This document shows positions 490 to 60,797 of a stretch of 64,000 nucleotides of DNA, in pieces. How positions within the stretch are numbered: the first letter of the stretch is position 1; each line of letters starts with the position of its first letter. Origin of the DNA: Trichoplax adhaerens (Eukaryota; Animalia; Placozoa). The position numbers and the translations under genes are program-made. The notes beneath the pieces were generated by a model. It saw only the letters and a program-made list of their open reading frames with translations, searched no databases and was not told where the DNA came from. The stretch covers positions 5,353,096 through 5,417,095 of the forward strand of contig NW_002060944.1 of the NCBI RefSeq assembly GCF_000150275.1, in the 5' to 3' direction.

Positions 490-3400
490 ATGTTGATGTC
501 AGAGGTATCGATGAAATTGCTCCTCTTCACGTGGCTGCCAGGCATAACCATAGTGAAGCAGCAAAGACACTATTATCTTTACAAGCAAAATCTGATATTG
601 GAGATGATGATGGTGATACTCCATTGCATGTCGCTGCCAAGTTAGGCTATCCTAACGTTTGTAAGGTTAGTAAAGAAACAAATTCGAAAAATGATAACTA
701 TACAGTAGGTATAGTTTTGCTTCAAATCATAGACAGCTTACCTAGAGTAGTCTAATAACAATATTGCTGATATCATCTCAATGATATACATTTGTCGCTT
801 GATATATCCCATTTTTTATCAGATCTTGATTGAACATAATCCATCGCTGATCAACAAAGTCAACAAGGATAAAGTAACCCCGTTACATATAGCATGCAGG
901 AGGAATAGACTCTTAGTCTGTCAACTATTGGTAATTTTTAATAACAGATAATGTTGAAAAATATTCCAATAAAGCAAACATAAACTTGCTTGATAATATT
1001 AAATAGGCATTTGTATATTTAAAATCGATGATACTGAAATAGATTGGTAATGCTGCTAATGCTATGCTCAAATCGGTGGATGGTAGTTTACCTATTCACT
1101 TTGCAGCATCTAAAGGCAGTTGCGAAATTATCGAACTATTGCTGGACATTGCTGCTTCTCGTAGCGAGCCTAAAACCAACCATTTAGCTATGCAGGATAA
1201 TGAGGGGAAAACTGCTCTACATAGGGCTGTTCAAGGTGGACATGTAAAAGTAAGGAAACATCATTATGAATTTCTACTACTATAATGATTGACCAACTTA
1301 CTTATTGCGGTACATAGTTAAACTTAAAATGCCATATAGATCTAAATTGAAATTTTCCTTAGCTCAATAGCAGTAAATATCTGCTGACAATGTTGCTAAC
1401 TTGACTACTATTTTTCCCTTAGGCAGCAATTACATGTCTGCATAGTGGATCTGATATCATGGCTACTATGGTAATAAAAGTTATTTTGAAGATCTTGAGT
1501 CTAAGATACAGACAATTTTACCACAACCGCTATTCAGTCTAAATTCTTTTTGTAAAATTAATTGCAGAATGATGGGCTTACACCTTTACACGTAGCAGCC
1601 AGTATTGGATCACCAACCCTAACTAGAATTCTGCTAAAAGATGGAGCACAAATCAATGCCAAGTGTGTCATAGGCCGAACTCCAATTCATTTAGCATCTT
1701 CGTTTGGTCATACTTCTGTAATCAAAATTTTATTAAATCAGGTAGTTTATGTAGACTAATGAAGATTATCATGCTGCTGTTTCAATATAAGCTTCTATTT
1801 ACATATTTGCATGAAAATATTCAAGAAATAAGTATAGTAGCCTCGTTGCTACTACGTTAGGTTCGTAGTTTAAAGATATTACAGTATTAGACGGACTTAG
1901 ATTACTTCAGCGTTTCATCATCACAATAATCATAAAAATAAGCGATTGCGAAGGGATGATAGATTAAAACCTTGAGATGCATGCAATCTTTCACAAATAT
2001 CTTTCATCAGAAATGATAGAGATGGCATTGGCTTAAGCACGCTTTTCAGTTAAATATTAGCAAGTTACAGTCTAAATTGTGCAGCATTTTTTCATCGAAA
2101 GAGATGAAGTAAAATTCTTAATGCAAATTTTCATTCCTGTATGTTTAATTCCAATCTTTTTAAAAAGTTTTCACCAAACTAAATCTGCTTTTTAAACCAC
2201 AATATCATAAATACAAGAAAAAAATTACTGAGATTGTCATTCTCGCATCAAACCAGACTTTACTGCACTCATAAGAAATCATATCTGATTCGGATAAGCA
2301 ATCATGTTGACTAAATCAAACTTAATTCTTCTTATTTTTAGGGAGCTGAAATCAACATTGTCGATGATAAATTTCAAACTCCGCTCATGGTTGCCACAGA
2401 AAATGGAAATTTATCATCCATTAATGAACTAATTTATCAAGGTGCAGATGTTTCAGTGGTAGACGATCAAAATAGAAACTGTTTACATCTAGCTAGTCGA
2501 GCAGGTCATCTAGAAGCTCTAATTGCTATTTTTAAGGTGATGGAACGATGATATCCACTTTTAAAGTTGCTATGAATGGGTTCTATTAGAACTAAGAATC
2601 TTTATCGTCGCATTTACAGAATTAGCTCATAGTTTGTGTTGATTTCTATCAATATTTATAGCATGGTGGACAAGGCTATGTCGATATTTTAGATAGCTTA
2701 GACAGAACTCCAATCCATTATGCAGCTGAAGCTGGCCATCATAGAGTAAGATAATTAAATATCATATTTGCACATGAAATTTTTTCCTGCTCTCACGTCC
2801 TTTTCTGGTAATACGTTAAAACTTTTAATTTAAATGTTTCTTGTTTTTAAATCCTCTCTCGATAGATCATTGAACTATTGCTAGCCAATGATGCTGGATT
2901 AGAATTTTCTGATGCAGACGATAACTTACCAATCCATTTAGCATGCAAGTAAGTTCCTGAAATGATCATTAGCCAAATGAAATAGACTGCATTTTGCCTT
3001 GACTTTAATGCTACCTGAATCTAAAGGTAGAAAAGAAAGATGTAGCCTAATAATGTCATTAGAATACAATTGAAGATGTTTCTGCCAAATTATATGAGAA
3101 AATGGCTTCCTTTTAATTATGCAGATGCAGTCTATGTAGATTTCAGCTGTAAATCAGTTCAATATTTGTATTTACCTCAATTGCGCATAATTCTAATTCA
3201 GTATCTCAATCTATCTGTTATGGCCATATAGGTCTGCTAATATCGCAAGTGTTAAAGTTTTATGCGATAAAAGCTTAACACATTTAAACAGTCCTGGAGA
3301 GCGCTCACGCACACCTCTTCACCATGCCATCGTCAATAATCTTATTCCTATTGTTGATTTTTTGATCAAATATGGAGCAAACGTTAATAAAAGGTAATTT

Positions 3401-6400
3401 TATGAAGTTATAATCTCGTTTGCCAGCGTTACTATATAGAATTAAAATTACCACTAGTTATTTGCTTGAGCCACGATTGAATATTGTACGTAAAATAGAT
3501 GTTCTAAGCAGTACTAATCAATTATAAAAATCAAGATATTTAATTAAGCTTAGTATTAGATGACTCGCGTCTATCAATTTCTTAGTATATTTATTGAATC
3601 TCTTTATTTCTACCAGAGATGGCAGCTATCGAACGCCACTATTATTAGCTGCTGAAAGGGGTTATTTTGATATCACCAAAATACTTCTGGAAAATAATGC
3701 TGCTATTAATGATCGAGCATCGGATGGTGTAAGTAAAATACTTTAATTCCTACTCTCAAGCTGACATATTCGAAGATAGCTAAATCTATTTTTCATAATA
3801 ATTTTTTTATAAATCTGATATAATAATGTTACATTTAAAATATCCCTATAGAAAACCGCTCTACATGCTGCTGCGACTTCAGATAACATTGAAATTACTG
3901 AGTTTCTACTCGCTAATGGAGCTGAAATTCTTAATGATAATGACAATAGAACTTGTCTTGATATTGCAATTGAAAATCAAAGCAAGAATGTTGCTATGGC
4001 TATCGTGAAGCAAAAAAAGTAAATGCAATCTGTTTACTCAATATTAAAATAGTAATTTGAGCTACAATATCCAATGATATATAACTTTACAAGAATTAAA
4101 GCCTAAAATTTTCAATCCTTACCCCGGAATTTACACGGTATATTATAAGCTGCCCTATTAATCAAAAGTATTTGTTTACTACCATGCTAAAAAGAATTAA
4201 AGATCTATTTATGAAAGTAGATGAAGAAGGTAGAACAGTAATGCAACGATTAGTTGAACAGCTTCCCGATGCAGCTCAGGTATGCTTACGAAATTAGCCA
4301 ATATTTTTCAACTCCATGCAGCATTTCTAATTATAATCCAATAGTTACGATTTTTCAACATAAGAGACTTTTACAGTTATTTATAAATATTCTATTACCA
4401 ATGATGATCATTTCTACTATTCTAATCCTATTAATTATGGTGCATTAGATGGTCATGGATCGCTGCATTACTCGATCCAAACATTTTAAAGGGCGCCAAA
4501 GTCGCGAAGTAAGTCAAATAAACTAATTATAAAGAGTTGGTTAAGATCTTGTTCACAAAATTTTACGCCATACATGTGTGCAGTTCTGATTTAGCCACTG
4601 AAAGCTACGGTATGCAAATATCTCTTACTAGGTTACATACGATTTCTCTTTCATTGATCCCGGGCCAACATTTGAAGAAGAAAATTTTTTAGTAAATCAA
4701 GATGACAAAAAGACATCAATTAATTGCAATGCTGTACAGGTAATTGCAGATAATTATAATTACAGCTTTAAGGCAGCTGCTTAAATATGGAGATCGTTCT
4801 ATTAGTCTTAGCAAGGTTGTTTTTATAATTATTTTCAATTCTACCGTCTCATAATCATATAATTGCTTACGAATGAATTTTTTCCTCAACTCTAACATCT
4901 CGATAACACAGTAGTTTCGAATGCCATCAATTAATGATTTATCATACTAAACAAGCAGAATAATAATTTCTTCCCAATTTTAGACTATGAGAAAATTGAA
5001 AAGAGGCAATTTAGTGAATCATGAACTATCAAAAGCCTTACTAGACTACAAATGGTAAGAGGATAAATAATATCTCCTCCTTAATCGGTTTTAGCTTTAA
5101 ATCAGCTTATCATTCCGCTTATTGCTAAATATAATTCCGGTATACCCATTTCATAGGAGAAAGTTTGGTGCTTACGTATTCTACGCCAATCTATCCATCT
5201 ATGTTATCTACTTGAGTTTATTAACTCATTTCACCGTCAGCCTGAAAGCTAGTCCAAAGAATAATTCTTTTAGCTCGGCTTTTAATCCAGCTCCAGTAAC
5301 AGTCGCTCCAACGACATCTTCGATAACATTGCCAGACAACAGTAGCATTTTTTCCACTATTACTACCGATCGGGTTTGTACTCTCATCACAAAGATTTCT
5401 AAAGTTACTTGACACCTTTTGCAATAGCTGATTGAATTATATCCTTAACTACTTGCTTAATTGCTATAGTTCCGCATAAATCTTTATTTTAGTATTGTAT
5501 GTACACAATTCATATAGCCAGTAACCGATTTTCTAATTACCTTTCGCACTCATAATCTTAGCCCCACTTATCAACACTTAAGATGATCTGTGATAGTATT
5601 TGAGAGCATCGCACGCATAAGTTGAACTTGGAACAGTATAACTAATTATTGTTTTTCTAAAACACTCTTACGGATTATAATTTGAGGATACCCTTGAAAT
5701 CCTACTATAATGAACTGCAAAGATATCTCAATCTTCCTTTCACCAAACTTGAATCTGTAATAGTTCATTTCTAGCCACTCTTAAAATACTTTAAATTGAA
5801 AACTACCTTCAGGATCTGCTACAGTGATTCACTATGATATCTTATTTCAATTTGGCACAAACTGAAACTAAACAGTCCATTTACTGTACTAGCATTTACT
5901 TCAGCAGTTATCGTTTAACTCTTTGAAAATAAGCTATAATGACCTATGATAAACAATTAACGTATCATGTGCACTATTTGAGCCTTATGCCACAGATATT
6001 TTCTGTAATTATTTCCAATAATGTCCTGTTCTATCTTATATTCAGATCAAATCTATAGCCAATTTGTTTATTTAACTTCATTTGAACTTTTAGAATTTGA
6101 GCCACCAACAATATTTGCAGTATAAATGTGGCATTCCATATTATCTAATGCAGATCTTAAAATCGCCGTAAAATAATCTTTAGAATCTTTTCTACGATTA
6201 TAATTTAACTTACATTATTGGCTTTAATGATACATATTCGATTTTTGGGGGATGATAAGGACATCTTAAAACCTAAAATAATTCATTAAGTTACATTTTT
6301 TACCTTCTTTGATAATTATTGCCTTTAATTTAAATCATTTTCAAAAATGGTGTAAATTATAAACTATGATATCTTAGTGTAACTCATGTGCAAACATTGA

Positions 6401-9400
6401 TCAATTAGGTTCCAAGGCCGTTCAATATAGTTATTCAAGTATCTGTCCTCGTTTTTTCTATTATCAACTTACTAAAGGAATGCTATCAACTATTACATTT
6501 GGTAAGTTAAACAACTAGTATATATTTAAATATTTTTGAATTTCATTCAATTTTATTTCTCCCCTGCAAGTAACCGTCAGACGATGATTATTCATTTTTT
6601 AATTTACTTTTTCAAGTATATTATTGGGACGCTAATTTGACATATGAGTTTTGCATTAAAGCAGACTTAAGTTCAAAAATTTAAGAAATGCTAAAGTTCC
6701 TATCGTTATGCACGATAACAGGTCAAACTACCATCCTTAGGGTTATAAGGGGGCACAGAACCCATTCACTACTATTACTATAACTGAAGTAATAATAAAT
6801 AGAATCTGAAATGGATATATATGTAGTAACAGTCGTAAATATAACTATTTCTTATACAGTACCAATGAATTTGAAGAGAATCGAGTAGGCACTAATTCAT
6901 GTACTTGACACTGGTATGTTTTCAGGACTTGAATTTGCCTTACGGGTATATGTTCTATAATTCATTTGCAACGTTATAGTCGATAGTAAGTTGAATCGAA
7001 GCATTACCCACGCTGTAAATGTCATGAGGGTTTAAAAGACATATTAAAATTAAATCAGATATGATCAAATGCTTTTACTATAAATTAAAGCTTTGCTAAG
7101 AAAGTCAACTTTGTATGCAATTGCTTATCGTTTAGTAGATTAACAGAAATATCTATAAAATAAAGAAATTAGCTTTATCTGTTTTGATCTATTTCGATTA
7201 TTTGATTTGAAAAGTAGCATCTAAACGATTAGAGTTTTATAAAAATAGAACTTTCATGTGCTATAATTTGCACAAGAATAGGTATAAATGGGCCAAAGAT
7301 ATAGTTTAGACTGCATTGAAAAGTGTTTGATATTTCTGATCTTTGGAATACAGGGTTTTGCCTATTTTAAGAATATTGGTAACTACATGGAAATATTTAT
7401 GTATATTTCAACGTTGATATTGATTACTCCACCTGGAAGAGTTCCAAATGATTGGCAATGGCTATTTGGATCATTTGCACTCTTTCTATCATGGATTAAC
7501 CTTTTGCTTTTCATGGAAAGGTATCCTTTAGAATTATTTTTACCAAATATTATCTACGCCTATAAGAATTACTTAATCAGCTAAAAACTTTGCCGCAATT
7601 GATAAATAACATAACTATTGAAGTAAATTTTTAAGATTTGCTTTTATAATCATAATGAGATTGAATTTCGTTTAGGATATCTGCTTTAGGTATCTATGTT
7701 ATCATGTTAAAGTCCGTACTGTTGACCTTTCTGCGGGTAATTGAATCAATATTAGAATTAAGCTAACACCTACAATGACTGCTTCAAACCTGCAACTATT
7801 CATTTGAAATTATAATTAACTATCCAATTGGATCATTAAACTCTTTGGGTAACATAGATCCTCGTTGTTCTTACCATTTTTATGGTGGCCTTTGCATTTG
7901 CATTTACAATCTTAGCAGGATCAGAAGTAAGCAGAAACATTTTAAAATAAATTGAATAATATTACATACAATATGATCTATATCCCGTAAGCATCACATC
8001 AATATTATTTATAATACTCTTACGTTATATTGATAATATTACTAAGGTATAAAGTCTTTTATATAATTCTAGGATGTTTTTAGCACTATTTCATTAGCTA
8101 TGATTAAGGTTTTGGACATGATGGTGGGAGAAATTGATTACAAAGATGTCTTTGTGACTGCTATTAGTGGTAGAACTATTAAATATCCGGATAATTATGT
8201 TCTCGTTGCTTTTCTCGTCATCTTTATCTTCCTCATGCCAATCTTACTGATGAATTTAATGGTAAAAGCTTAAATATTATAGATATATATATATAAAAGT
8301 AATTTGCTATATATGAGATTATGCAAAAAAGTTATAAAATGAAAACTGACACTTTCTTAATGGTTATAACTATTTGTTTATGGAAAATGTAGATTGGTTT
8401 AGCAATTGGAGATATCGACAAAATTCAAAGAAATGCAAATATAAGGCGCTTAGGCATTCAGATTGATTTTTTAGACGATTTAGAGCGATCATTACCAAGA
8501 TGGTTACGGAAAAAATTTCACTGCGTCAAAGATATACGGAATACCCAAAAATATTTATATAAGGTATTGGTCTAATGTAAAACTAGCTAGGAGAATACTT
8601 GTAGAGTAACTTGATGGAAAAAGGAGCTACTTAATGTAAAATACTTGTAAAATTAATGGAAAGAATATTAAGTAATGCTTATGGGCAGTTATAAGCAGCC
8701 AGTGTGGGATATCAGTTGCAATTCAATCTTAACATAGCGAGGGAAATGTATGTAAGCATTGTTGATAGATAAGAGATACTAGTACAAACTCACGTCGCTT
8801 TGCTGACGGTTTACGATAATGTACCCATTTGTTAATAATTAACAGATACATATATGAAATATTTAGCAAACTATAAGTATTACATGATATTAGGTGCAAA
8901 CATGATCGAAACGATGGTTATGATATCAATAGATAGAAATAATAAATTGTTGTAAAGTATAATAGTAATTTGATATTAAAGGAACGGAAACCTTGCTAGT
9001 AATTGCAGCTTTTATAATTATTAATTGATTCTACTATAGCAGTTAGTATCTTGACTAATTTTAAATTGGAATGAAATCTTTTTATCATTTTAGTTCTACG
9101 CTTACGTTTATGGTGAAGTTACTTCTAAAAATGAGGAGGATGTAGAGGAATTTTATATTGAGCAAATTGATCGAGTTTTAACAGAGTTGGATTGGCAAAA
9201 GAAGCAGTAAATTCAACATAAGAATAGATTATAAAATAAGTACTAGGATTACTATAATATTATTATCATCCATGACCTATTTGACTATTTTCTTGATATA
9301 GAATAAGAGGAATATTTACAGAAATGGATAAAATGATGGAGACTATACTCGAAATTCAAAGCTTTCAAGAATTCTCACATCATGCACCAAAGGGAGGATC

Positions 9401-9494
9401 AATGCAGTCTGAAGACTCTAAAAAATCAGAAGGCCCTAAGGCGTTACTAAGTCCTGAAGCATCAGATACTTCGGATGAGAAGACCTACTTGTAG
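490..9494 (+). CDS. TRPA1: TRPA1-like ankyrin-repeat cation channel, copy A (5'-partial; exons 3-26 of 26)
   Basis: Manually joined GT-AG exons keep an open frame: 490-665, 823-930, 1043-1249, 1423-1470, 1568-1741, 2342-2536, 2662-2745, 2866-2948, 3232-3393, 3617-3728, 3852-4018, 4195-4279, 4449-4508, 4632-4739, 4984-5054, 5157-5373, 6409-6501, 7354-7520, 7676-7736, 7858-7926, 8073-8261, 8393-8563, 9094-9206, 9302-9494 (TAG). Serial TPLH-type ankyrin repeats, pre-S1 LDYKW, six TM helices, pore MMVGEIDY, S6 MPILLMNLMIGLAIGDI, TRP-like helix; ends EKTYL*. Confidence 0.93.
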
Positions 9495-12400: not shown

Positions 12401-12548
12401 TTGCGATTGCTGGTATAATTTTATTATTTTATCGCCCGATTGCAATTTTTTTCCATTTAACCTTCAATTACATAATTATGCTTGTCAAATAATCGGAAAT
12501 TTGAATACGTTGATAGATCTCAGAAATTAGAAAGTAAAAAAAGCCAAA

Positions 12549-12660
12549 ATGAAATCACGAGAGGAACTAGAGTGCTTAGTTCTCATGATATTTTTCGAGC
12601 AAGGTCATAAAGCAAGAGAAACGATTTAAAATTTAGCGAAAAAGTTCTCTTCGATAGACG
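12549..12660 (+). mobile_element. Possible relic of a mariner transposase N-terminus
   Basis: Translates MKSREELECLVLMIFFEQGHKARETI*NLAKKF (TAA 12627-12629), resembling the first HTH region of mariner transposases (Hsmar1-type FEFKMGRKAAETTRNINNAF). No catalytic domain or clear TIRs seen. Confidence 0.4.
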
Positions 12661-15211: not shown

Positions 15212-15452
15212 TGTAGAAGGAGCAACTTACTAGTATGCCCCACAAATGAGTGGGGATGGTATAAAAGACCGAGCGAATTACCATTCGCTAGTAGTAGTCC
15301 CTACGGGCTAGGACAAGCTAGTAGAGACTAGAAATCGGATGGCCGAATGAAAAGTACTAGTGGTTTGAAAGAAACCTGAGCAGTTGTGTGACTGTGAGGA
15401 AAGAGTTGGTTTTCCCTTAGTAGAAGACTCGCAAGTCAGTGGAAGCCTTACA
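15212..15452 (+). mobile_element. Putative solo LTR (241 bp)
   Basis: Starts TGTA and ends TACA, flanked by the direct repeat CAATT (15207-15211 and 15453-15457). Internal TATAAAAG at 15260; more GC-rich than its flanks. Confidence 0.7.
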
Positions 15453-15866
15453 CAATTACCTAACATTACCTGACATAACCAAATCACAAGCGGGATTTGT
15501 GACAAGCTATTATGCAAAGTTTACTGCATACAGGTAGTTCGCAGGAAGTGGCTTATGATGTCCATTTAGATTAAGAAGATAATGAAAATTTAACGGTTCT
15601 CCATCGAGCTGTGCAGGGCGGACATAAATTGATGTAATTTCAGTTTGCTCTGTCAAACTCTTCTCGATTAAATTTGAGATACAATTATTATACAGTATTG
15701 CCGGTATCACAGTTTTTTGAATCTAGCATCTATTTAATTAGTGTCGGTTTATATAAAAATATAAGCTGGCCGATATTTGCAATTTCTGTCCCATTAATTT
15801 ATACTCAGGCGGTTTGGCTTATCTTCATCATGGAGCCAATATTGCGGCTGAAAAGGTACACATTCC

Positions 15867-16200
15867 GTAGGTTATTAAGTTCTAATATGCAAGATTACTA
15901 GTTATAATTTAGCGGATATCAATAAAGTTTTCGCCCAAATACTATAGTAATTTATCTAATCATAACAATATTTCGTAGGATATTAATTTCGATTATGCAA
16001 AACTGCAAATTTTAATTTAGTGGATACCTATATATATAAGTTTCAAGTTTTAGTGCAAATGCTTTAGTAATTTTCTAATCATACCTATATTTGTAGGATA
16101 TTAATTTCTAATATGCAAGATTACTAGTTATAATTTAGCGAATATTTGTAAAGTTTAAGGTTTTAGTGCAGGTGCTATAGCATTTTATCTACTCATATCA
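15867..16200. repeat. Degenerate tandem repeat, ~110-120 bp x3
   Basis: Units begin GTAGG(A/T)TATTAA at ~15867, ~15975 and ~16093 and share the TATGCAA...TAATTTAG and AAGTTT...TAGTAATTT blocks. Confidence 0.75.
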
Positions 16201-47322: not shown

Positions 47323-47633
47323 AGTGGCATAGTGTGAAATAGAATTAGACATAATTAGTAAAGGCTTAATTGAAAAATATCATGATGTAAAAGGAATATT
47401 TTCAGTTGTATATCCAAGCCATGTAAATGCGCCTATATACGTGATCAAATTTGTTTACAATCTGTTACCTTATGGAGGTAAAAGATAATTAAATTAAAGT
47501 TCTATCTATAATCATAAAAAATAGCAATTTCAAACTATGATTTCATAATAAAATTTAATTATTAAAATTCTCCTTTCGGATAATACTATTTTGGTTCAAG
47601 TTTTGTATTTTGATGCACTAAAGTTGTACAGCA

Positions 47634-50600
47634 ATGGAAATGCTTAGAAGATCAGATTGGTCGAAAACTTCGGTTTTATTTAGTAAAGCAAAGAATGTAG
47701 ACGCTCACGATATACTACAAGTAAGATCAAATACTAAATACTTTCACTCTTATTGTAGCTTACTTCTTATACAGTAAATAAACTAAAGTACAAATACGCG
47801 CTGTCTGAAATAAAGCTATCTATAACACCGGGAGAGTATCTTTGCCCATTTAATTGCAATTTTTATTCGACTTTTCTAGACTTATTTGCTAGAATTTGAT
47901 TTACTATTAAGTTAATCGTCTCTTAACATACAATACTTTCACAAAATTTCGAGTACTTCAATCGTTTTATGACATGAAATTATTACGGTATATATCATCG
48001 ATTTAAATAACTCCCTACCATTTAATTAAAGTTTTTAGTTACTAATTCTTTACTAAAACATGCCATCTCACCTTCTTTTCTATCACATGAAAAATTTATC
48101 AATCTACATTTTATTCACTATCCTAATATTAATGTTAGGCTGCAAAAAGTAACGATATGCTGCTTTTGCAACAAGCTCTACCAAATGAGGAAATTGAAAC
48201 ACTTGCTAACCAACTGGATCGCGATCGTTTAGCCCCATTGCACTATGCGGCAAGATGTGGTAATGCTGAAGTCATTGAATGTTTAATCGCAAAGGGTGCA
48301 GGTTCGTTAATCATCCAGTAGCAACTACTTACAATGCAAAAGATTTGATGATATCTACAGTAATTATTGTTATTAATTTTGATTTAATACCCATTATAAT
48401 TATCGAATTCCTGACTGCAAATACCGTCAGATCTCATTATTGCTGTGTTATTTCATCTTAGACATTAATATTAAAGGCCTAAACAATGTAACACCACTAC
48501 ATTTGGCAGCAAGGTATAACAGATATACAGCTGTAAAAGTATTACTAATGTTCAATGCTGATATCGGCGTTAAAGATATCGACTCTAATACGGCACTGCA
48601 CTATGCAGCAAAAGGTGGGAATCAGAAGATTTGTGAGGTAAAACTGAAAAAGATTGGAGATATTCTACTCTGCTAGTTTATGTCTTCATTTCTTACTAAA
48701 GTTACTAATGTCAATCATAATAAGAAGCGCATTACTTGAAATCCAAGAATTATAGTAATTATTATAAAGAAGACATAATATAGATGTAGAAGACGACAGT
48801 TTAATTAGACAAAATTACAAAGCAAATCAATTGCCACAAATATTTTTGATACATTTTTGTTCTAATGAGTGCTTTATGGTAATGGGAATAAAAGTACTTA
48901 GATTAGAATATGATACCAGTAGCACCGAAGCCAGTTATTTATTTTTGTCCATAGGTATGCTTTGCTTAAAATTACATTACATCATCCTCTAAAGTCTTAA
49001 CATATTCGATTTCAAGTGATTTAAAAGATGCAGCAATACTATTGTACAGTATTATTGTCACAAACAGTAAAAAAAATACTTAATTAATTCGAGTTTTACT
49101 CATCATCAATTACCTTACAGGAATTACTCAACAAGCGCCCATCGTTAATTGATAGTGTAAATGCAGATGAAATGACACCTTTACATTTCGCTTGCAATAC
49201 CAATCATGAAGCAGTTTGCGTCTGTCTGGTAATATATTGAATCAAATATCTAATGCAATAGACAGTCGAGTATCTACTTCGAGAGAGGTAGCAATATAAT
49301 TCGATGTTATGTCTCATCCGCTATTATTGCAGATTGAAAGAGGAGCAGATATCTTACGTAGAACTGCTGATGGCAGTTTGCCGATTCACTTGGCTGCTAG
49401 TAAAGGAAATACAAGTCTAATGGAATTATTATTGACTACTGGGGAGGCAAGATATGAACGTCGTGAAAACCATATTGTAGAGTGCAATCACGATGGTGCC
49501 TCCGTTTTACATCGAGCTACTCAATGTGGCCAAAAAGAGGTCAGGATTTCTTTCAAAAATCTATAGATTAATAATGAGAATATTTCATTTACTGTAGAAC
49601 TTGCTATTTTTTGTTGAATCATTTCAAAACTTAGCACTTAACCAAACTAATCTTACTCAATTCAACTTCATAGGCTGTCATTTTTGCCTTAGATGCTGGT
49701 GCCGATGCCTCCTTAAGAGATGTAAGTGTGTCTTGATTGAATTTTTACTGGAAAAGTTTCTATACTATGCATTCTTAAGACAATTGTACTACAACGATAT
49801 ACTGGAATGCCATAAAGTTAGTTAGCTTAGCCAATCAAACTGCGAATGATAATAGTGGTATTGCTCTGTAAAGATTGTTTTAATTTACAGCAAGTTAGGA
49901 CGTCTCTTAATAGTTATCCTTTCTTTTCAATTCGCTAACAGAAAAATGGCTATACACCCTTACATGTTTTAGCTATTACAGGCAATTGTGAGATTTGTCA
50001 AATTTTGATTGATAGAAGAGCTGCTATTGATGCTCGTGACAACGAACAACAAACTCCATTGCATCATGCAGCATCATTGAACAATTGCCAAATAGGAGAA
50101 CTTTTGGTCAAAGCTGTAAGTCAGGGTTTTAATTTGCTACTATAAATAGATATCAGGCTGCATTGCCAACTACAGAATAAAGTAGTAACACTCGCTGGCG
50201 GTAAATCGATCACGAAACCCCAAATTTGTATAAAATAAGGACTTTATTCAATCTTTATAAAAAGAATAATCTGCACCTGACTTTAGTCTAGCTATATACA
50301 ACTACTAGAAAGACTTATAGGGAAAAAACTGCTAGAATAAACTAAAATTGCCTATTTATATACTTTTCGTAGCGTTTGTAGCTACAATTATCATAGCAAC
50401 ATCCTACCTAATTTTGCCCGCATGCAAATTATTATTAGTAAAAAAAATTTTGCAGCGATCTATAATCTAATGTCGTTACAACTACAGTACACATTATTGC
50501 TGCTAGCCAAAGTACGATGAAGTAAACATTTCCTAATATATGAGTTACATATGTATTTTTACCTCTAACACTAATAGTAACTCAGTACCCTAATGTACGA

Positions 50601-53600
50601 ATATAGTTATAGGTACTCTACCATAGAATCTTCAATTACAGTCTACGGTTATGAGCTACTAAATATGCCTAAGACAAACATAGATAGCGCTATTGTACAT
50701 CATGCTAGACATGCCTAATAATCTACAATCCAATATAAAATTACGTTGTACTGCTATTCTACATAATTTAAATTGAATTTGTGAGAGTTTGGCTGCTATA
50801 ATCTCTATTCAGGTACGATATTTCAGCGAGCAATAAAATTTTCAATCAAAGTTACGAATGATAATAAAAAAACTGCTTCATTCCCTTCCTACAGTACCGT
50901 TCTTGGTTTAAAATAAAATGGAAAAATGTTGACTATTCTCTACTTAAATCGTCATTTCAACTAGGGAGCTAATATTGATGTGGTAGATGCAAAGGGTAAA
51001 ACACCTTTAATTTGTGGAATCTCTAGAGGTCGTACAGAAATAGTTCGATATTTGCTTTTGTCTGGCAGCAAAGTTGAAGGAACTGATACAGAAGGAAAAA
51101 ATTGCCTACACTTAGCTGTAGAAGGATCCTATGAAGATTTTGATGTAATAAATTGTCTACTGACAGTAAGATGATCCACTAACTCATAATAAAATTTCAT
51201 CGTATTTACTTTATTCTGATCTCTAATCGGAAACTTTATACCAGTAATAAATTTAAATTTACTCTTGGCTTCTTGTTAAGAGAAAATCGTCGGAGCTTTT
51301 AAATACCACAGATCATCACCGTAGAACACCCTTTTATTATGCATGCAATAAGGGAGACTACAAGGTAACTAGAGAGTATCAATTTATGTGTTTTATCATT
51401 ACTATTATGATAACTTACGCTTTTTGACATTTCGAGTTAGTAAGGTAATTTATTAAATTGGATTAGATTTTCGAGAAAATGCTCCAATTTCAGCCCGATT
51501 TATATATCACCGATGAAGATGGCAACAACTGCTTTCATGCGGCATGCATGTAATTTTATAGCAAACTAGTAGTACTTTGCTACAGCATTGTATAAAGAAT
51601 TTTAAGTCGCTTATATCCTGAATTATTTATGATATAAATTATCATTATGATAGTGGTATAGTATAATTAATTTTCTACCAGCTTAAAATTATGGTAAACT
51701 ACACCTTATAACAAATAACAACCTACTTTTTCTGAGATATTTGTGTCTATCGTTCTGCTAAGAAATTTTATTGATATTTCTATCTAATATTAACAGAGCT
51801 GGAAGATATGAAATTATTAAAACATTGATCTGCCGATTTCCTGGTCTACTATGTAGCGAAGGCGAACGTAATTATACTGCTTTACATATGGCTGTGGCTA
51901 ACGGTTGTCCATTTACAGTGGAAACTCTACTAGATCGGGGAGCTGATACTTATAGAAGGTAAGTATCCATAATCAGATTATCTTTTTCCGTTTTTGAATT
52001 ATTGGTACTATTGATATTCAAGACATAGAGGTTATAGCATTACTAACGATTATAATTTTTCTATTGGTTATTCATACATTTATTGACAAATTAACCAGGG
52101 ATTGCAGCTATTCCACGCCTCTAGATATCGCTTGTATGAAAGGTTTTTCTCATATTGTTGAAATTTTAATCAACTATGGAGTGGATATAAACTCCGTTAA
52201 CAAAGCTGGGGTAATATTCGCCATAGCCATGATATTACATTAATTATGTGTATGATAACACACTATTTTTAAGCCAATTCATACGATTGCTAAATTTTAC
52301 TCAATATCTAAAATACGCCAGCAATCTTTACTAGATAGTATTTTTTATCTAAATTACCTCAGATTATATCGCTACCTGAAGTCTAACCCTACTAGCGGTT
52401 AGATTTCGATCAATATAAATCAAAATATTTTGATTGCACTACAATTTTCTTCATGATAGGAATCAGGGTTGCACATAGCCGCTCAGTACGGTCATACTGA
52501 AATTATGAAACAACTTATTGATAGCGGAGGTGATTTATCAAAAGAAACAGTCAGAGGAGAAAATCCTTTAGAAGTTGCTATCCGATATTGTCAACAAGAT
52601 GTTGTTACCGCAATAGTAACCTTATTAAGGTATACATTATAACAAAATAAAAAATTCATTTTAAATGTTCTAACTATATTCGCATAATAAACAAATTTCA
52701 CTAAGATATTTATATTTGAAACTATCGACAGTAATTGTTGCATGTTATTCGATAGCGAGCTAAAGGATCAATATAACAGAAGTAGATTAGACTGAATGGA
52801 GTGTTATCTATAACAAACTACGAACCTTAACCGTAGTGATAGAAAAGTCATTGCAATCTGCATTAAATTTCTGATAATTATTTCACTTAATACTAATTGC
52901 AAGGATTGCTTTTATAATCAATTAGTGCGAAAAATAACGAGAACACAGATATAGTATCTTACGCGCACAATTTCAGCATTACCCGTATCAAATTGATAGC
53001 AGAATAAATCTTTAAATCGTTTACGCTTGCAACCAACCGTTAGGGAAAAGGATCTTTTATTAAAAGTTGGAGAAGAAGGCATAACAACATTTCAATCTAT
53101 CGCCCTAGCTATGCCAGAAGTAGCAGAGGTTATATCTACTACATAATGATTTTTTCAATAAAAAACAGTGTCAGTAATGAAATATTCAATATATTATGGC
53201 TGCGATGTATGATAAATATCAAATTGAGATAATCCTCAACGGAATTCACTTTTGGTAATCATTTTCGAAATTCATGGATGGCATTAGCTAACCAATTTTG
53301 TTATATTACAGAGTATTATGGACAGATGCATTACAAAGATCGCCACATCAGATATTAAAAACAAAGAGAAAATTTTAGTAAGTTTTATTAACTGTTGTTT
53401 ACGTAAGCATTATTTATCCGTAATCGAATCAAATGATGCTTATTGCCCCTAAAAGATAAAGTTATTATGAAATTGCATAGGGCTTAGAGGTGTACTAAAA
53501 TAGAATTAGATTTAGCAAAATTATACTCGAGATCTATGGATAATTATTTGTTTCTTTACAATGAAATTATTAACTATCAAAATGTTAGCAATTTATTTCA

Positions 53601-56600
53601 TCAGAGCTTAACCTAATTTTTGTCAGTATTTTTGCTAAGGTGGAATATGACTGTACATTACTTGAACCTGGTGTTACGTTTGAATATGCACATGGAGCTC
53701 CAAATGGAATTGGTAGCTTTAACGCTTTACTGGTGAATATAAGATTTTACGTCCGGTGTACACGCATTACTATAATTTTAAATTTTTATTAATTAATACT
53801 CTTCAGTTTAAATCATGACACGCTATAGCAATAGTATAGCCAATATACATGGAGGATAGTTTAAGTTTGTAATTTTGGACGACATTCCAAGTTAAATACG
53901 AATCGCACAAGCCTAGTGTTAACTCACGATCGAATAATATCATCTGTATTTCTATACAGTATCTACCAATATTAGATGTAAAATTAAGTATATATCATAT
54001 GAACAGATTGTTACGTATTATATTTGAAAAAGAATTTCCAATCTGACTGGAAAACAATTAAGAATATTAAAGACTATCGGTGAAAAAAGTTGTAAAATTG
54101 CTATAAATGACTATCATCAGAGCACGTACTGCATATGCATATGTAGTATGCTTACCAAAAAATAGATGGCTAGTAAAATAATGTCAAGAGCCGTAGCTTA
54201 TACTGAAAGCCACACAAGCTGAAAATTGATTGTAAAATTAAGCCCTCGTTTGACTACAATCTATAATCCGGTACTTCGAAAATAGCCTAGTATAAAATAA
54301 AACTAAAGAGCAATGCTACTGTACATTTGAGTGCACAATTCTTTGTAGTTCAGCGGTATTTTAACATATTTCGTAAGTAAAAGTAAAGGTTCAGAAGAAT
54401 GATCATACCTAGTAACATTCGTCGCATTAGTTCATAGCGATATAAATAAATTACAGTGCTAACTGTAGATCTTATTTTCGTAGACAATAGCAAAATCGAA
54501 CCGTATTAACTTATTAGAGCATCCACTTAGCAGCAAACTCTTAAATGTTAAATGGTAAATATTAAATATAGAACTGATAACCCTGATTTCCTACGCATAT
54601 AAGTTTAGTACGACATAACTATTAGTAATTTATAAATGTATTGTTTACTATAGCGTCTATCAGATCCATTCATCAGATTTGTATTTTTTACCTTTTTATA
54701 GGAGGCAATTTGGTCGATATGTGTATTATCTAAACCTGTTCACCTATATCCTTTTTGTTGCATCCTTAGTGACATACGTGCTTATTATAGAACAATTCTA
54801 TAAAAACAATTCTGGAAATACAATCACGTTTAAAGGGCTTAGCCCACAATCAAGTATTACAAATTCATTCGAGGTATCATCCACGACTGTAACTGCTTCT
54901 TTTGAAAATAGCACAAATAGTAATGCGACTACTCCGCCAAATGTAAGTTTATGAGGAAGATATCTACTGCAGTTAGTTATACATAAGTTTATCTTTTAAG
55001 TACATTAGAGTATACGAAACAGCTTTAAAGCTGTTTCGTTTTCATGAATGTTAGTATATTGATATAACTGTAATTATTTAGTAAATAGTAAAACTATACT
55101 GTTAATACCTAATTTGTTGAATTATATTAAACATCATGTTATAATGTTTCTAAAGTAATAATTTACACTCACGTACCTAATGGGGCTACCAGAAATGAAT
55201 GCAGCGAAGCATACTATACCATGCATTTATAAATTTTGACACATACGAAATCAATTCGACGACATTTTCTAGCTTTAATAAACTAAATATGATCTTATAA
55301 ATGGGCAATTCCCCTTAAACTGCGCTATATTAAATTAAAATTATTTATTAGTGGTCAAATAATATGTCCTAAAATTATTTCACCTAAGTGTATGTTAAGG
55401 ACTAAAATTTCACGAAGTACAGTAACACAATGAGAAGAGACACTTTCTCTTCCTATCACTTTTACTGTTATACCGCTACTCCGGTAATAAAGACTAGAAT
55501 CATTCTAGAGTAAAATCACTAGGTAATCTGCTATAAAAGAACCACGCTTCCTTTGGCGATCCCTAACCAACTATGTATAGTAGTCAGTGTAACCCACGAA
55601 GAACTCGGAGAAATCACTAAAAAGCACTTTATTCATCATTGACGCGGTCTTAAACAGATATTTAATATTATGATAACTCCAACCGCATCCAGAGTTATAA
55701 TGTTAGTAAATTTTCTAATGGATGCCAGCGCATCTAAAATGTATCATTCAGGACTTCTTAAAAATCCGGTCTAGCTCTGGCAATTACAACATTTCTATCG
55801 CATGAATTACTATTACAATTTAGCATAATTTTGTGTTAAATCTCCATAGTTGACATGTAAGCTATAATTAGTAATTTTACATAACAATCTGTGTTAGCAC
55901 CTACGAATAATTCAAGTACTGTAGACAGACTATTTTCAATCCTAAGACGTTCAAATTTAGGTATAATCTAAATATAATCAGGGCTTAATTTACTACAGTC
56001 TTTACGATAAATTTCCTATTAAGTCAAATACGAACTTATCTTTCTAAAAATTAACAGTTGATTATCTTTCAAGGTATTTTACTACCGTTGACAGTGTGTA
56101 ATTAAGTTTTCCATTGTGTATTACTCATTTCTGGATTAAAGTATATTATAGTTCTTAGTTCATACATGTTCCATATCAGCAACACCGCTTAGTCATATCG
56201 TTATCATACGTATGAAGATATTGATATTCTAACAGCAATTAATAACAATATTCTATGTAGCATGTTGTTCTTTTCCTATTGTTGTATATAAGTTACGGAT
56301 TCTATGAAAGCGACTTATCTTACTAAAAGTGTGTTCTACTATTCACCCGTTCTTGAGTAGGTCATTCTCTTCAATAAACTACATTAATAACTTCTTTGTC
56401 GTCAGTGCCATTATGTGTGGCCGATCAATTATAACATTTCCCAAGAAAGTTAGCGAACGGCTTAAGATGATATGATTACTGTCAGATAGAGAAGACCTAG
56501 GTCTTCTCTATCTACTGTCATTATTTCTTGTGTATTCCTCAAAGTAACGCTGTTTGATGTCCCAATCCAAAAAAGAATCTTGTTCTGCACCATTGTCTCT

Positions 56601-58718
56601 TAATTTTTACATACAAATTAAACTTTTTATATAATAAAGATTTATAATATATCTTATAAGTATATAAGATATTGCCGCCTAGTCATCAGAAATAGTAATA
56701 GAGAAAAATATTGATTTGCAATAGTTTTAATGCACTGCATAAAAGTGGAAATTCGATTGAAATTATCGCAAGATTTCCAAGAATTCATAGTTTAATTCCG
56801 CTAAAATGTAGGACGTGGTATCATTTATCCAGTCTTTATTGATCTTCCGAATTCTCATTGCCTTCTTCTCAATACTGAATGTAATTCGCGAGCTATTTCA
56901 ATTAATTCAAGAGGTAAGACAATATATGCTTATCATTGTTACATTATTTAAGTGCTGTAATTTTAGGATCATTCATTTAAGACTCTGTCTAGACTGATTT
57001 CAAACTGTGTCGTACTATGTTCTTTTTTTAATAAGCGAGGACGCTATTTTATGTGCTTCGAAAACTATTTTGAGCTAGCTCTTCATGTTATGGTCATCAT
57101 TTTTATTGCGGATGGTAGCACTAATCCAACTACATGGTCCATTGGTAGCATCGCCATTCAAATGGCAGTTTTCGAATTAGTCATATTTCTAAGAAAGTAA
57201 ATTATCAGCATATTTCTAGCAGCGTTTTAAATGTAATGTGTATTTAATTTACTGCATTATCTTGAACTGATGCAACAATAACGTAATAAATTCATTTACA
57301 GATGTAGTTATAATTTAAAATAGTATTGCAATTGGATTAATTTAATAAAAGAAGGATTAATATTTATCGCATTATTGAAGTAACAAATATCCATTTACAG
57401 GCTACCAGTTATTGGAAAGTATGTACTTATGGTTCGAACTATGACTCGTACCATTGTAAAGGTATAGTTATAAACGGTCATAGCTAAGATAGCATTACCA
57501 CCGTAATTTGATTTTATCGTTTTATCTTAGTAGCAGACATCCATATTTTTACGAAATAAAAATATATGCCCATGGCTCACCATTAAAATATTAATCATTT
57601 TCAATTAGGTACTCGTTATTGTACTTATATTGGTATTTGGTTATGCTATTAGCTTTAATATGCTATGCAATCGTCAGGTTTGTAAAGTAGACATGTAAGA
57701 TTTCAATTTCAATATCTATGCTTATGGTTAATCTGATAAATCCATCTTTCTCGTTATTACCGCAATTATAATTAAAATAACATAAACTTCGATCTAATCT
57801 GTAAAATTACAGGACTTTAAACAATCATCATTAATACTCAAAATTTATTAATAATATCAGGCAGCATTCTACAATATGCCTCTATCGTTTATTAAAGTTA
57901 TCGATATGATGATCGGTGAGGTCGACTATAAAGATCTCTTTCTAGATGGCGTTAAAAGCGGAAAAATTCCTTTCCCAGCTGGCATCGTGACATTTTTTCT
58001 GCTAATGATTTTTATCTTAATGATGCCGATATTAATCATGAATTTGATGGTAATCTGTTTAATTTATTATACATGGTAATAAAGGCAAATAGGAATGGAA
58101 TTAATATGATTTTCATTTTATTTATATGCAGATCGGTTTAGCTGTAGGAGACATCGCTGAAATGGAAAGGGAAGCTTCACGACGTCGATTAGTTGATTTG
58201 ATTCTTTTTTTTAATAGTATCGAAAAGGGTGTACCCAAATTTTTACGTAAAAACTGTAAATTAATCAAATTTACTTGCACTGAAAAAGGAAATGTAGAGG
58301 TATCATACATTGCTTGATATTAGCAGTCACAATCTTAAGCCTTAATATCATTTCGCGAATTTCTAAACCTAATTTAGTCTTAGATAGCTACTTACTAGCT
58401 GCATTTATTGAAAGTTACCGAAAAATTTTATCATTATCTTAAACGTAAATAGGTCAATAAATTAGATGCAAACGAAGCTAAGCAAAAACAATACTATGAA
58501 TCTATCGAGCAGCACATGAACAAAATCGAGCGTATACTATTAGACCAGCAATCAAGGTTTAGCGAATAAATTCTTGGTTATCGCTTTAGCTGTATTATTA
58601 ATTTACATCTAAACCATAATATTATTGTCAATCTCCTAAATATTGCAGACTAGAAACTATCGAAGCTAAATTGGAATCTGCAGGAAAATCTGAAACACCA
58701 CCATTAAATGAAGAATGA
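47634..58718 (+). CDS. TRPA1: TRPA1-like ankyrin-repeat cation channel, copy E (~1084 aa, 26 coding exons, ~17 ankyrin repeats)
   Basis: Exons: 47634-47720, 48139-48301, 48462-48637, 49121-49228, 49333-49539, 49674-49721, 49942-50115, 50965-51165, 51281-51364, 51467-51549, 51797-51958, 52099-52210, 52460-52629, 53044-53128, 53312-53377, 53640-53732, 54484-54554, 54702-54942, 56812-56913, 57036-57196, 57401-57461, 57609-57677, 57861-58049, 58132-58299, 58453-58556, 58649-58718; total 3255 nt. Pore MMIGEVDY. Closer to D than to A/C. Confidence 0.93.
56477..56520. mobile_element. Perfect 28-bp palindrome between 8-bp direct repeats (minimal DNA-transposon remnant)
   Basis: TACTGTCA [GATAGAGAAGACCT AGGTCTTCTCTATC] TACTGTCA in intron 18 of copy E. 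Confidence 0.7.
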
Positions 58719-59944: not shown

Positions 59945-60631
59945 ATGGAGATGTTTAGAAGATCTGATTGGTCAAAAACTTCGGTTTTATTTAGTAAAAC
60001 AAGAAATACAGCTGCTCACGATATACTGCAAGTAAGATCAAATACCAAGTTGTTTTATTGTCTATTACTTTTAATACAATAACTAAACTAAACTAAGCGC
60101 GAATGCTAGTAGTCTGAAATGAGGCTATCTGAGATATCAAGAGAGCATTTCTGCTCATTTAAATGCAGTTTATATTCAACTTTTCCAGGCCTGCTTGCCA
60201 CTGTTTTATGTATTATTATTAACTTAGTCGTCTCTTAGCATACAATACTTTCATAAAATTTTAAGTCTTTTGCTGGTTTAATGATGTAAAGTTAGCATAA
60301 ATATCTTTAATTTTTATAATCTCTACCGATTAATCAAAAATTCTCAGTGACCACGATAGCAATTCCTTACTAAAATCATGATCATGCAAACATATCGTCT
60401 TGCCTTTGCTATCATATCGAAAATTTCATCAACCTATTCATCACTCTCTATGCTAACGCTAATATTAGGCTGCAAAAAGTAGTGATATGCTGCTTTTACA
60501 GCAAGTTCTACCAAATGAAGGAATCGAAATATTTGCTAACCAACTAGATCGCGATCGTTTAGCCCCATTACACTATGCGGCTAGAGGTGGTAATGTTGAA
60601 CTCATTGAAGGCTTAATTGCAAGAGGTGCAG
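59945..60631 (+). CDS. TRPA1: TRPA1-like copy F, exons 1-2 only (young duplicate of copy E, interrupted by a gap)
   Basis: Exons 59945-60031 (MEMFRRSDWSKTSVLFSKTRNTAAHDILQ) and 60469-60631 (AAKSSDMLLLQQVLPNEG...APLHYAARGGN) match the sizes of E exons 1-2. Introns and upstream DNA align with ~46900-48420 up to the gap at 60748. Confidence 0.8.
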
Positions 60632-60747: not shown

Positions 60748-60797
60748 NNNNNNNNNNNNNNNNNNNNNNNNNNNNNNNNNNNNNNNNNNNNNNNNNN
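60748..60797. other. Assembly gap (50 N)
   Basis: Run of N. Confidence 0.99.

What the first reader, a model, noticed from the sequence alone, without database searches (positions are those of the whole stretch)
490..60631. Tandem array of at least six TRPA1-like channel genes evolving like a sensory-receptor repertoire
Seen: four intact, strongly diverged paralogs, one dead copy and one young duplicate sit head-to-tail with the same exon scaffold. Known: TRPA1 is usually single- or low-copy, while tandem birth-and-death arrays are typical of chemoreceptor families. Inferred: an expanded TRPA-based chemo-, thermo- or mechanosensory system, possibly forming heterotetramers, and possibly in a nerveless animal if the placozoan guess is right. 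The array extends beyond the left edge.
Basis: partly seen in the sequence, partly recalled or inferred. Interest (0 to 1): 0.85.

Follow-up and report, generated by a model that had tools for sequence, protein, structure and literature searches.

The report
Tandem TRPA channel genes in Trichoplax
The window holds a real head-to-tail row of TRPA-type ion channel genes in the nerveless animal Trichoplax adhaerens, part of a family of about 40 such genes that formal TRP surveys of this species seem to have missed, although their sensory role is still untested.

Summary
The genome is Trichoplax adhaerens.

**What is in the window**
- Four intact 26-exon genes sit on the + strand: A, C, D and E, of 1074-1128 aa. 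Each encodes about 16 ankyrin repeats and a six-helix TRP channel.
- B is a decayed copy that keeps only ankyrin exons.
- F is represented by its first two exons only.

- F is not a stray duplicate. It is the 5' end of a fifth intact gene.
- F's exons 3-26 lie 204 kb downstream in this scaffold, behind runs of N. They are contiguous with exon 2 in Trichoplax sp. H2 and in an unplaced contig of this genome.
- To the left, only exons 1-2 of A lie beyond the edge, next to a QSOX-like gene.
- The array continues to the right instead, with five more pore exons after F.

**Family**
- The channel half alone matches TRPA1 structures at E about 1e-35, against 6e-6 for TRPV1.
- In an unrooted tree the genes fall in a placozoan-only clade outside bilaterian TRPA1.
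- They lack C621 and C665 but keep C641, K710 and the Ca2+ site.

**Selection and expression**
- dN/dS is below 1 everywhere it could be measured.
- Spliced RNA contigs confirm eight introns of E and one of F.
- The genome has 41 pore-exon matches, mostly in clusters.

The sensory-repertoire and heterotetramer ideas remain untested. The scan had not noted this array on other DNA.

The parts
490..9494 (+). Gene A, exons 3-26 plus stop codon. Exons 1-2 lie left of the window at L001:7251-7319 and 8832-8997. 1115 aa, TRPA-family channel. The old JGI model TRIADDRAFT_53526 / XP_002109464 covers only its last 309 aa.
   Evidence: Spliced alignment gives 26 exons, ATG to TAG, no internal stops, 1114/1115 identical to Trichoplax sp. 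H2 RDD38695. P0001 is the same as its C-terminus.
8073..8261 (+). Gene A exon 23: pore helix, selectivity filter (GEIDY) and S6.
   Evidence: Aligned with the other pore exons, 23 of 63 columns invariant. The equivalent exon of C matches Pfam Ion_trans and only TRPA1 chains in the PDB.
13667..17631 (+). Pseudogene B: remnants of ankyrin exons 2-10 of an A/C-type copy. Recognisable pieces lie at 13752-13827, 14008-14183, 14370-14499, 16269-16442, 16869-17075, 17141-17221 and 17549-17631.
   Evidence: Alignment with A, C, D and E as guides gives 9-11 in-frame stops with the A, C and E guides, plus frameshifts, and covers only residues about 50-440. It scores best with A and C as guides. No pore exon lies here. 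The same remnant exists in H2, annotated as a 118-aa ankyrin protein.
22753..32757 (+). Gene C, 26 exons plus stop, 1128 aa. Pore exon at 31695-31883.
   Evidence: Spliced alignment runs ATG to TAA with no stops, 1127/1128 identical to H2 protein P0095. Pfam finds Ank on exons 2-13 and Ion_trans on 31695-31913.
34506..45547 (+). Gene D, 26 exons plus stop, 1074 aa (1079 aa with the canonical exon 4/5 alternative). Pore exon at 44187-44375. The old JGI model TRIADDRAFT_53529 covers only the last 517 aa.
   Evidence: Spliced alignment is 1065/1074 identical to H2 RDD38685. P0015 maps to its 3' half. The alternative exon 4/5 boundaries are 36919-37026 and 37124-37330.
47640..58718 (+). Gene E, 26 exons plus stop, 1082 aa. 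Pore exon at 57861-58049.
   Evidence: Model built with paralogues as guides, all 25 introns GT-AG. It matches the H2 annotated protein P0214 apart from an H2-specific exon-7 duplication. Spliced RNA contigs from three studies confirm introns 18-25 exactly.
59951..60631 (+). Gene F, exon 1 (59951-60031) and exon 2 (60469-60631). This is the 5' end of an intact 26-exon gene, about 1078 aa to its stop codon with about 6 codons of exon 3 in the gap. Exons 3-26 are at C1413:5617102-5627611 in this assembly.
   Evidence: 24 further exons in frame, one GC-AG intron. Exon 2 and exon 3 are contiguous in the H2 contig and in unplaced contig C1157 of this genome. RNA contigs splice 60031 to 60469, and at 60631 they run on into exon 3 sequence.
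60748..60797 (.). Run of 50 N. This is the point where collinearity with Trichoplax sp. H2 ends and gene F is interrupted in this scaffold.
   Evidence: N runs listed. The H1-H2 alignment stops at window 60745 and resumes at C1413:5617102, directly after at least 8.1 kb of N.

Best explanation
**What it is.** The window holds the left part of one tandem array of placozoan-specific TRPA-family cation channel genes in Trichoplax adhaerens. The order is A, pseudogene B, C, D, E and the start of F. Five more pore exons follow F on the far side of a gap-flanked 204-kb block of this scaffold.

**The proteins.** Each intact gene has 26 exons. It encodes about 16 N-terminal ankyrin repeats, a linker, six transmembrane helices with a pore loop, and a TRP-like helix with a C-terminal tail.

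**How the array arose.** It grew by repeated duplication of the whole unit of about 11-12 kb. E and F are the youngest pair and their introns still align. A/C and D/(E,F) are older. B is a copy that died.

**Shown here.** Gene structures, TRPA family assignment, intactness in two lineages, purifying selection, and transcription with correct splicing of E and F.

**Inferred.** The proteins form tetrameric, Ca2+-modulated, non-selective cation channels. This rests on the conserved filter (GE-x-DY), the S6 gate motif and the four residues of the TRPA1 Ca2+ site. They do not use the C621/C665 electrophile mechanism. The paralogues probably serve as differently tuned detectors of thermal, chemical or mechanical stimuli in different cell types, because they differ most in S1-S4 and the C-terminal tail.
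For: **Species.** P0001 is XP_002109464 of T. adhaerens, on a contig of 9,739,543 bases, which is the length of C1413.

**Structures.**

**Family.**
- The pore exon hits only TRPA1 chains in the PDB.
- The full-length orthologue of A aligns in one stretch with Drosophila TRPA1 (E 4.7e-120) and human TRPA1 (about 1e-115), residues 47-1000 against 56-999.
- The channel half of D alone gives TRPA1 at 6e-38 to 7e-34, with TRPV1 next at 5.7e-6.
- The best full-length database hits outside placozoans are TRPA1-like proteins at 29-34% identity.
- Pfam finds Ank over residues about 50-590 and Ion_trans over about 763-972.

**Conserved residues.**

**Selection.**
- E-F: dN 0.12, dS 0.43, omega 0.28. 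Every 100-codon window gives 0.10-0.56.
- H1 against H2 orthologues: 39 synonymous and 23 non-synonymous codon differences, omega 0.07-0.23.

**Expression.** Spliced contigs in runs X5, X6 and X10, from three studies, match eight modelled introns of E and F intron 1, and read from F exon 2 into exon 3.

**Lineage-specific radiation.** All window genes sit in a starred clade of 10 placozoan proteins.

**Family size.** The genome has 41 pore-exon matches, mostly in clusters with spacing of about 11-17 kb.
Against: - No functional or cell-type data were available, so the sensory role is inference from family membership.
- No window reaches dN/dS of 1, so there is no sign of the positive selection often seen in ligand-binding parts of chemoreceptors.
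- The tree has no outgroup, so placement inside TRPA relative to the basal TRPAs is unresolved.
- RNA evidence covers only E exons 18-26 and F exons 1-3. A, C and D rest on the H2 annotation and on conservation.
- Contigs cannot give expression levels.
- The five genes after F were not modelled.
Confidence: 0.6

Rival explanations
1. The genes are working TRPA-family channels, but they are not an environmental sensor repertoire. They would serve general epithelial or intracellular jobs such as Ca2+ entry, control of ciliary beating, contraction or secretion, and the copy number would reflect dosage or neutral tandem duplication.
For: Purifying selection acts everywhere and no window has omega above 1. 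The pore, gate and Ca2+ site are invariant among paralogues. TRP families expand in many phyla regardless of nervous-system complexity (bioRxiv 10.1101/2021.11.14.466824).
Against: Paralogues are only 33-56% identical, and the strongest divergence is in S1-S4 and the tails. That fits functional diversification better than dosage. All characterised TRPA channels are stimulus detectors (PMC11526382).
Confidence: 0.25
2. The array is mostly a graveyard. The apparently intact copies would be untranscribed or decaying, and only one or two genes would function.
For: B is dead. F has a GC donor in this genome and a second one in H2. The old JGI models are fragments.
Against: Five full ORFs of about 3.2-3.4 kb over 26 exons each have no stops. 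A, C, D and E are also intact in H2, with omega 0.07-0.23. E and F give correctly spliced RNA contigs in three studies.
Confidence: 0.04
3. The genes belong to another ankyrin-bearing TRP group, either TRPN/NOMPC-like or the ankyrin-TRPM type noted elsewhere in this genome, and only look like TRPA because of the ankyrin repeats.
For: Ankyrin repeats dominate full-length scores, and NOMPC and ankyrins score highly with the full-length query. An ankyrin-TRPM gene was noted on another piece of this genome.
Against: The channel half without ankyrin repeats matches only TRPA1 strongly, by 30 orders of magnitude over TRPV1, and matches neither NOMPC nor TRPM at E up to 1. The pore exon alone hits only TRPA1. 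There are about 16 repeats, not 29.
Confidence: 0.03

Closest known systems
TRPA1 (human, PDB 6V9V/3J9P; Drosophila, PDB 7YKR)
   Same: - Collinear over ankyrin domain, linker, S1-S6 and TRP-like helix.
- About 16 ankyrin repeats.
- Acidic residue in the filter and the S6 motif MNLMIGLA(V/I)GDI.
- C641 and K710 equivalents kept.
- Ca2+ site E788/Q791/N805/E808 kept in all five genes.
   Different: - About 30% identity.
- Outside the bilaterian TRPA1 clade in the tree.
- C621 is Thr and C665 is Pro in all five genes.
- About 40 family members rather than one.
'TRPA1-like' second TRPA clade of cnidarians, hemichordates, echinoderms and molluscs (PMC11526382; PMC12980990)
   Same: - Closest non-placozoan hits are hemichordate and coral TRPA1-like proteins at 32-34% identity over 85-94% of the length.
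- These proteins have not been characterised functionally.
- They are multi-copy in many invertebrates.
   Different: The placozoan genes form their own clade or clades. Orthology to any particular cnidarian or bilaterian TRPA1-like gene is not shown.
Lineage-specific TRP expansions in local genomic clusters (Hsiao et al., bioRxiv 10.1101/2021.11.14.466824) and cnidarian TRPN multiplications (PMC4494053)
   Same: Tandem and local duplication of a TRP subfamily within one phylum. Old gene models are split and hide the family.
   Different: The text of that preprint held here names neither placozoans nor this array.
Tandem birth-and-death chemoreceptor families (olfactory, gustatory and ionotropic receptors)
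   Same: Clusters of head-to-tail paralogues of mixed ages with pseudogenes.
   Different: - A different protein fold.
- 26 exons per gene.
- No window with dN/dS above 1.
- No evidence on ligand binding or on one receptor per cell.

Membership tests
TRPA subfamily of TRP channels | Long N-terminal ankyrin repeat domain of about 14-18 repeats | tested here: met
   Pfam Ank families cover residues about 50-590 of the H2 orthologues of A, C, D and E, and exons 2-13 of C one by one. This region is collinear with human TRPA1 residues 56 to about 600.
TRPA subfamily of TRP channels | Six-helix channel domain with a pore loop, followed by a TRP-like helix | tested here: met
   Ion_trans at 763-972 of P0091. 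The alignment to human TRPA1 runs through S6 and the TRP-like helix to residue 999. The filter and S6 motifs are conserved in all five genes.
TRPA subfamily of TRP channels | Channel domain closer to TRPA than to any other TRP subfamily | tested here: met
   P0015, the channel half of D with no ankyrin repeats, gives TRPA1 at 6.2e-38 to 7.2e-34, TRPV1 next at 5.7e-6, and no NOMPC, TRPC or TRPM at E up to 1. The pore exon matches only TRPA1 chains.
TRPA subfamily of TRP channels | C-terminal coiled coil | tested here: inconclusive
   The alignment with Drosophila TRPA1 extends to residue 1063 of 1115. No coiled-coil prediction or structure was made.
TRPA subfamily of TRP channels | Placement inside TRPA in a tree rooted with other TRP subfamilies | not tested
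   The tree has only TRPA-type sequences and is rooted at its midpoint.
TRPA1 in the strict sense (orthologue of human and Drosophila TRPA1) | Falls inside the clade of vertebrate, insect and mollusc TRPA1 | tested here: not met
   That clade is starred (SH-aLRT 100) and holds no placozoan row. The window genes sit in a starred clade of 10 placozoan proteins.
TRPA1 in the strict sense (orthologue of human and Drosophila TRPA1) | Electrophile-sensing residues C621, C641, C665 and K710 | tested here: not met
   In A, C, D, E and F, C621 is Thr and C665 is Pro. C641 and K710 are kept.
TRPA1 in the strict sense (orthologue of human and Drosophila TRPA1) | Ca2+ site E788, Q791, N805 and E808 in S2-S3 | tested here: met
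   All four residues are conserved in all five genes.
Birth-and-death sensory receptor repertoire | Many paralogues in tandem clusters, of mixed ages, with pseudogenes | tested here: met
   41 pore-exon matches, mostly clustered. Identities range from 33% to 78%. Pseudogene B.
Birth-and-death sensory receptor repertoire | Diversifying selection on stimulus-sensing parts | tested here: inconclusive
   E-F omega is 0.10-0.56 in all windows, highest in the S1-S2 region (0.42) and the C-terminal tail (0.56). Only one pair is young enough to measure, and no site models were run.
Birth-and-death sensory receptor repertoire | Paralogue-specific expression in sensory cells | not testable with these tools
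   Only contigs of bulk runs were available.
TRPN (NOMPC) | About 29 ankyrin repeats and a TRPN-type channel domain | tested here: not met
   There are about 16 repeats. NOMPC (5VKQ) matches only through ankyrin repeats with the full-length query and not at all with the channel half.

The most novel reading that the evidence does not exclude
The roughly 40 TRPA-like genes of Trichoplax, mostly in tandem arrays such as this one, are the animal's main repertoire of primary environmental sensors for temperature, chemicals or touch. Differently tuned paralogues would be deployed in different cell types, giving an ion-channel counterpart of a chemoreceptor family in an animal without neurons.
Probability: 0.2. 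Interest if true: 0.8.

Novelty: new member of a known kind. Interest (0 to 1): 0.5.

Why it matters
**A gap in the literature.** Trichoplax shows thermotaxis, chemotaxis and coordinated behaviour without neurons, and its sensors are unknown. A recent thermotaxis paper (PMC10498350) states that earlier surveys listed only TRPM, TRPML, TRPP and TRPV for this species. It also states that XP_002109464, which is the tail of gene A here, had not been recognised as a TRP homologue.

**What this work adds.**
- The old gene models are fragments of full 26-exon TRPA-family genes.
- There are about 40 such loci, mostly in arrays.
- Those tested are constrained and expressed.

This gives a concrete, corrected candidate list for heterologous assays and for re-reading single-cell atlases.

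**A practical correction.** The reference scaffold splits gene F with a 204-kb block. Anyone using that assembly would mis-annotate the array.

Tried and rejected
- **PDB search with the 118-aa exon 18 region of C (29667-30020):** no hit. This S1-S2 region is too divergent to use.
- **Representative-library search with one pore exon:** mostly short fragments. It was useful only for reaching the Trichoplax and H2 proteins.
- **Peng et al. 2015 (TRP classification):** not held in the library, so the claim that TRPA was absent from earlier Trichoplax surveys rests on PMC10498350's summary.
- **Full-text searches for a described placozoan TRPA array:** none found. Najle et al. 2023 list gene D (TriadG53529) in a broad orthogroup with Drosophila TrpA1, pain, pyx and wtrw. 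That group also holds many sponge ankyrin proteins, so it was not used for counting.
- **dN/dS for A-C, D-E and the cross pairs:** synonymous sites are saturated, so these were rejected as uninformative.
- **F as a pseudogene with two frameshifts:** rejected. The apparent frameshifts are GT-to-GC donor changes, one in this genome and two in H2.
- **First tree run:** timed out and was resumed.
- Database searches used single exons by reference or database protein ids. Searching the joined E and F models was left out. The joined models were used only in local scripts for alignment, dN/dS and the tree.
Full report
**Source.** The window is G000:C1413:5353096-5417095 of a 105.6-Mb assembly in 1414 contigs. 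A protein identical to the end of gene A is XP_002109464 / TRIADDRAFT_53526 of Trichoplax adhaerens. It sits on a contig of 9,739,543 bases, which is the length of C1413. The placozoan guess was right.

**Observation.** G+C is about 31% throughout. Long open frames lie mostly on the + strand. A blastp of all stop-free segments against each other shows one series of short exons repeated at about 474-9491, 13956-17632, 23720-32754, 35167-45544 and 48139-58314. A short extra copy lies at 59448-60740.

Pfam finds ankyrin repeats on the first twelve or so exons of copy C, and Ion_trans on the exon at 31695-31913.

**Gene models.** The pore exon led to Trichoplax and Trichoplax sp. H2 proteins. I wrote a protein-to-genome spliced aligner and used the H2 proteins as guides.
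- A has 26 exons from window -2750 to 9491 and encodes 1115 aa. Exons 1-2 are in the left flank L001.
- C has 26 exons at 22753-32754 and encodes 1128 aa.
- D has 26 exons at 34506-45544 and encodes 1074 aa.
- All three run ATG to stop without internal stops. They are 1114/1115, 1127/1128 and 1065/1074 identical to the H2 proteins.
- E was built with D and C as guides. It has 26 exons at 47640-58715, encodes 1082 aa, and all 25 introns are GT-AG.
- E later proved to match the H2 annotated protein P0214, apart from an H2-specific duplicated piece.

Exon lengths and intron phases are the same in all four genes. The only deviation is D exons 4/5 in the H2-guided model. A canonical alternative (36919-37026 and 37124-37330) fits the paralogues better.

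Protein identities are A-C 56%, D-E 47%, and 33-35% between the pairs.

**The dead copy.** B (13667-17631) aligns only to residues about 50-440 of the guides. It has at least 9 stops and frameshifts, scores best with A and C, and has no channel exons. The same remnant is in H2.

**The 'young duplicate'.** Window 59951-60031 and 60469-60631 copy exons 1-2 of E.

The H2 contig NOWV01000165 is collinear with the window from the left flank to 60745. Identity is 99.3% up to 50257 and 97.1% after it. Collinearity stops exactly at the 50-N run at 60748-60797.

In H2 the gene simply goes on. Its continuation maps in this genome to C1413:5617102-5625378 at 96-98% identity, 204 kb downstream and directly after at least 8.1 kb of N. 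Those N may be an assembly gap or a withheld stretch.

There I find exons 3-26 in frame with one GC-AG intron.

An unplaced contig of this same genome, C1157, joins window 59466-60747 to C1413:5617102-5618000 with 61 bases between. RNA contigs also read from 60631 straight into exon 3.

So F is a fifth intact gene. The 204-kb block that splits it is most likely a scaffolding error or specific to one haplotype. That block begins with the 156-bp tandem repeat and the Ependymin-like ORF of this window.

After F, five more pore exons follow, with consecutive pore exons 11.6-13.9 kb apart, at 5639077-5690948. To the left, the next gene is a QSOX-like gene on the other strand. The array therefore ends there.

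**Family.**
- The pore exon hits only TRPA1 chains in the PDB.
- The H2 orthologue of A aligns as one stretch with Drosophila TRPA1 (E 4.7e-120, 10-1063 against 50-1135) and with human TRPA1 (about 1e-115, 47-1000 against 56-999). NOMPC matches only by ankyrin repeats.
- The channel half of D alone (P0015) gives TRPA1 at 6e-38 to 7e-34. TRPV1 is next at 5.7e-6, with no TRPN, TRPC or TRPM.
- Outside placozoans the best full-length hits are TRPA1-like proteins of hemichordates, corals and molluscs at 29-34% identity.

Assignment to TRPA is therefore secure.

Orthology to TRPA1 is not. In an unrooted maximum-likelihood tree of 50 proteins, the vertebrate, insect and mollusc TRPA1 clade is starred and holds no placozoan row. 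All five window genes lie in a starred clade of ten placozoan proteins, as (A,C) and (D,(E,F)).

In all five genes the equivalents of human C621 and C665 are Thr and Pro. C641, K710, the Ca2+ site E788/Q791/N805/E808, the filter glutamate and the S6 motif are kept.

**Selection.** E and F are 78% identical in protein and 84% in coding DNA, with dN 0.12, dS 0.43 and omega 0.28. Their introns still align at 69-84%.

By region, omega is:
- 0.22 in the ankyrin domain
- 0.14 in the linker
- 0.36 in S1-S4
- 0.33 in S5-S6
- 0.54 in the tail

No 100-codon window exceeds 0.56. Older pairs are saturated.

Between this genome and H2, the synonymous and non-synonymous codon differences are:

| Gene | Synonymous | Non-synonymous |
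|---|---|---|
| A | 4 | 1 |
| C | 4 | 1 |
| D | 16 | 9 |
| E | 15 | 12 |

All four are intact in both lineages.

**Expression.** One read-laying run was allowed, and I used window 54701-60700. Contigs of runs X5, X6 and X10, from three studies, carry joints at:
- 54942/56812
- 56913/57036
- 57196/57401
- 57461/57609
- 57677/57861
- 58049/58132
- 58299/58453
- 58556/58649
- 60031/60469

X10 is on record as RNA. These are exactly the modelled introns 18-25 of E and intron 1 of F. All four runs have a loose end at 60631 that reads into F exon 3. Contigs cannot give expression levels. A, C and D were not tested.

**Family size.** A profile of the five pore exons finds 41 matches in the genome, 26 of them at E of 1e-11 or better. 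Most are in clusters:

| Contig | Position (Mb) | Matches |
|---|---|---|
| C1413 | 0.56-0.65 | 8 |
| C1413 | 1.46-1.50 | 4 |
| C1413 | 5.36-5.41 | 4 |
| C1413 | 5.63-5.69 | 6 |
| C1413 | 6.91-6.95 | 3 |
| C1410 | 6.68-6.85 | 9 |

**Literature.**
- I found no text describing this array.
- PMC10498350 says earlier surveys listed only TRPM, TRPML, TRPP and TRPV for T. adhaerens. It picked up XP_002109464 by reciprocal BLAST.
- GenBank names the H2 proteins 'TRPA1'.
- Najle et al. place gene D in a broad orthogroup with the Drosophila TRPA genes.
- TRP expansions in local clusters are reported in general terms.

**Verdict.** It is a new member of a known kind. The sensory-repertoire and heteromer ideas are reasonable but untested.

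Searching them against the databases was left out.

Noticed in passing
window 60748-64000 and on to C1413:5617101: A block of about 204 kb, flanked by N runs on both sides, splits gene F in this scaffold. The block is absent at this place in the Trichoplax sp. H2 contig and in unplaced contig C1157. It is probably a scaffolding error or specific to one haplotype.
   Followed up: partly
window 60798-61427: Tandem repeat of a 156-bp unit, 4.0 copies, 97% matches, directly after the N run.
   Followed up: no
window 61805-62863: A 352-aa ORF interrupted by an N run (62466-62846). Its first 220 aa match Pfam Ependymin at E 1.2e-14. It is not part of the array.
   Followed up: no
window 49934-50560, against H2 record 81011-81638: In Trichoplax sp. 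H2, a 1.3-kb insertion in intron 7 of gene E carries a second copy of exon 7. The annotated H2 protein has 49 extra residues, about 1.5 ankyrin repeats. The two lineages therefore differ in repeat number.
   Followed up: partly
L009/L010 (contig C1157) against window 55430-56974 and 59466-60747: The unplaced contig C1157 is 93-95% identical to the main scaffold but 97-99% identical to Trichoplax sp. H2. The sequenced strain seems to carry an H2-like second haplotype here.
   Followed up: no
window 50257: Identity between this genome and H2 drops from 99.3% left of this point to 97.1% right of it. This is a mosaic pattern of divergence along the array.
   Followed up: no
L005:26487-26986 (intron of gene F in H2; about C1413:5619500 here): A dispersed repeat of about 500 bp, with some 40 copies across the genome at 73-89% identity. 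It is probably a transposable element.
   Followed up: no
L001:1970-2257 (-), left flank of the window: First exon of a QSOX-like sulfhydryl oxidase gene (thioredoxin, FAD_SOX and Evr1_Alr domains in the H2 annotation). It marks the left end of the array.
   Followed up: partly
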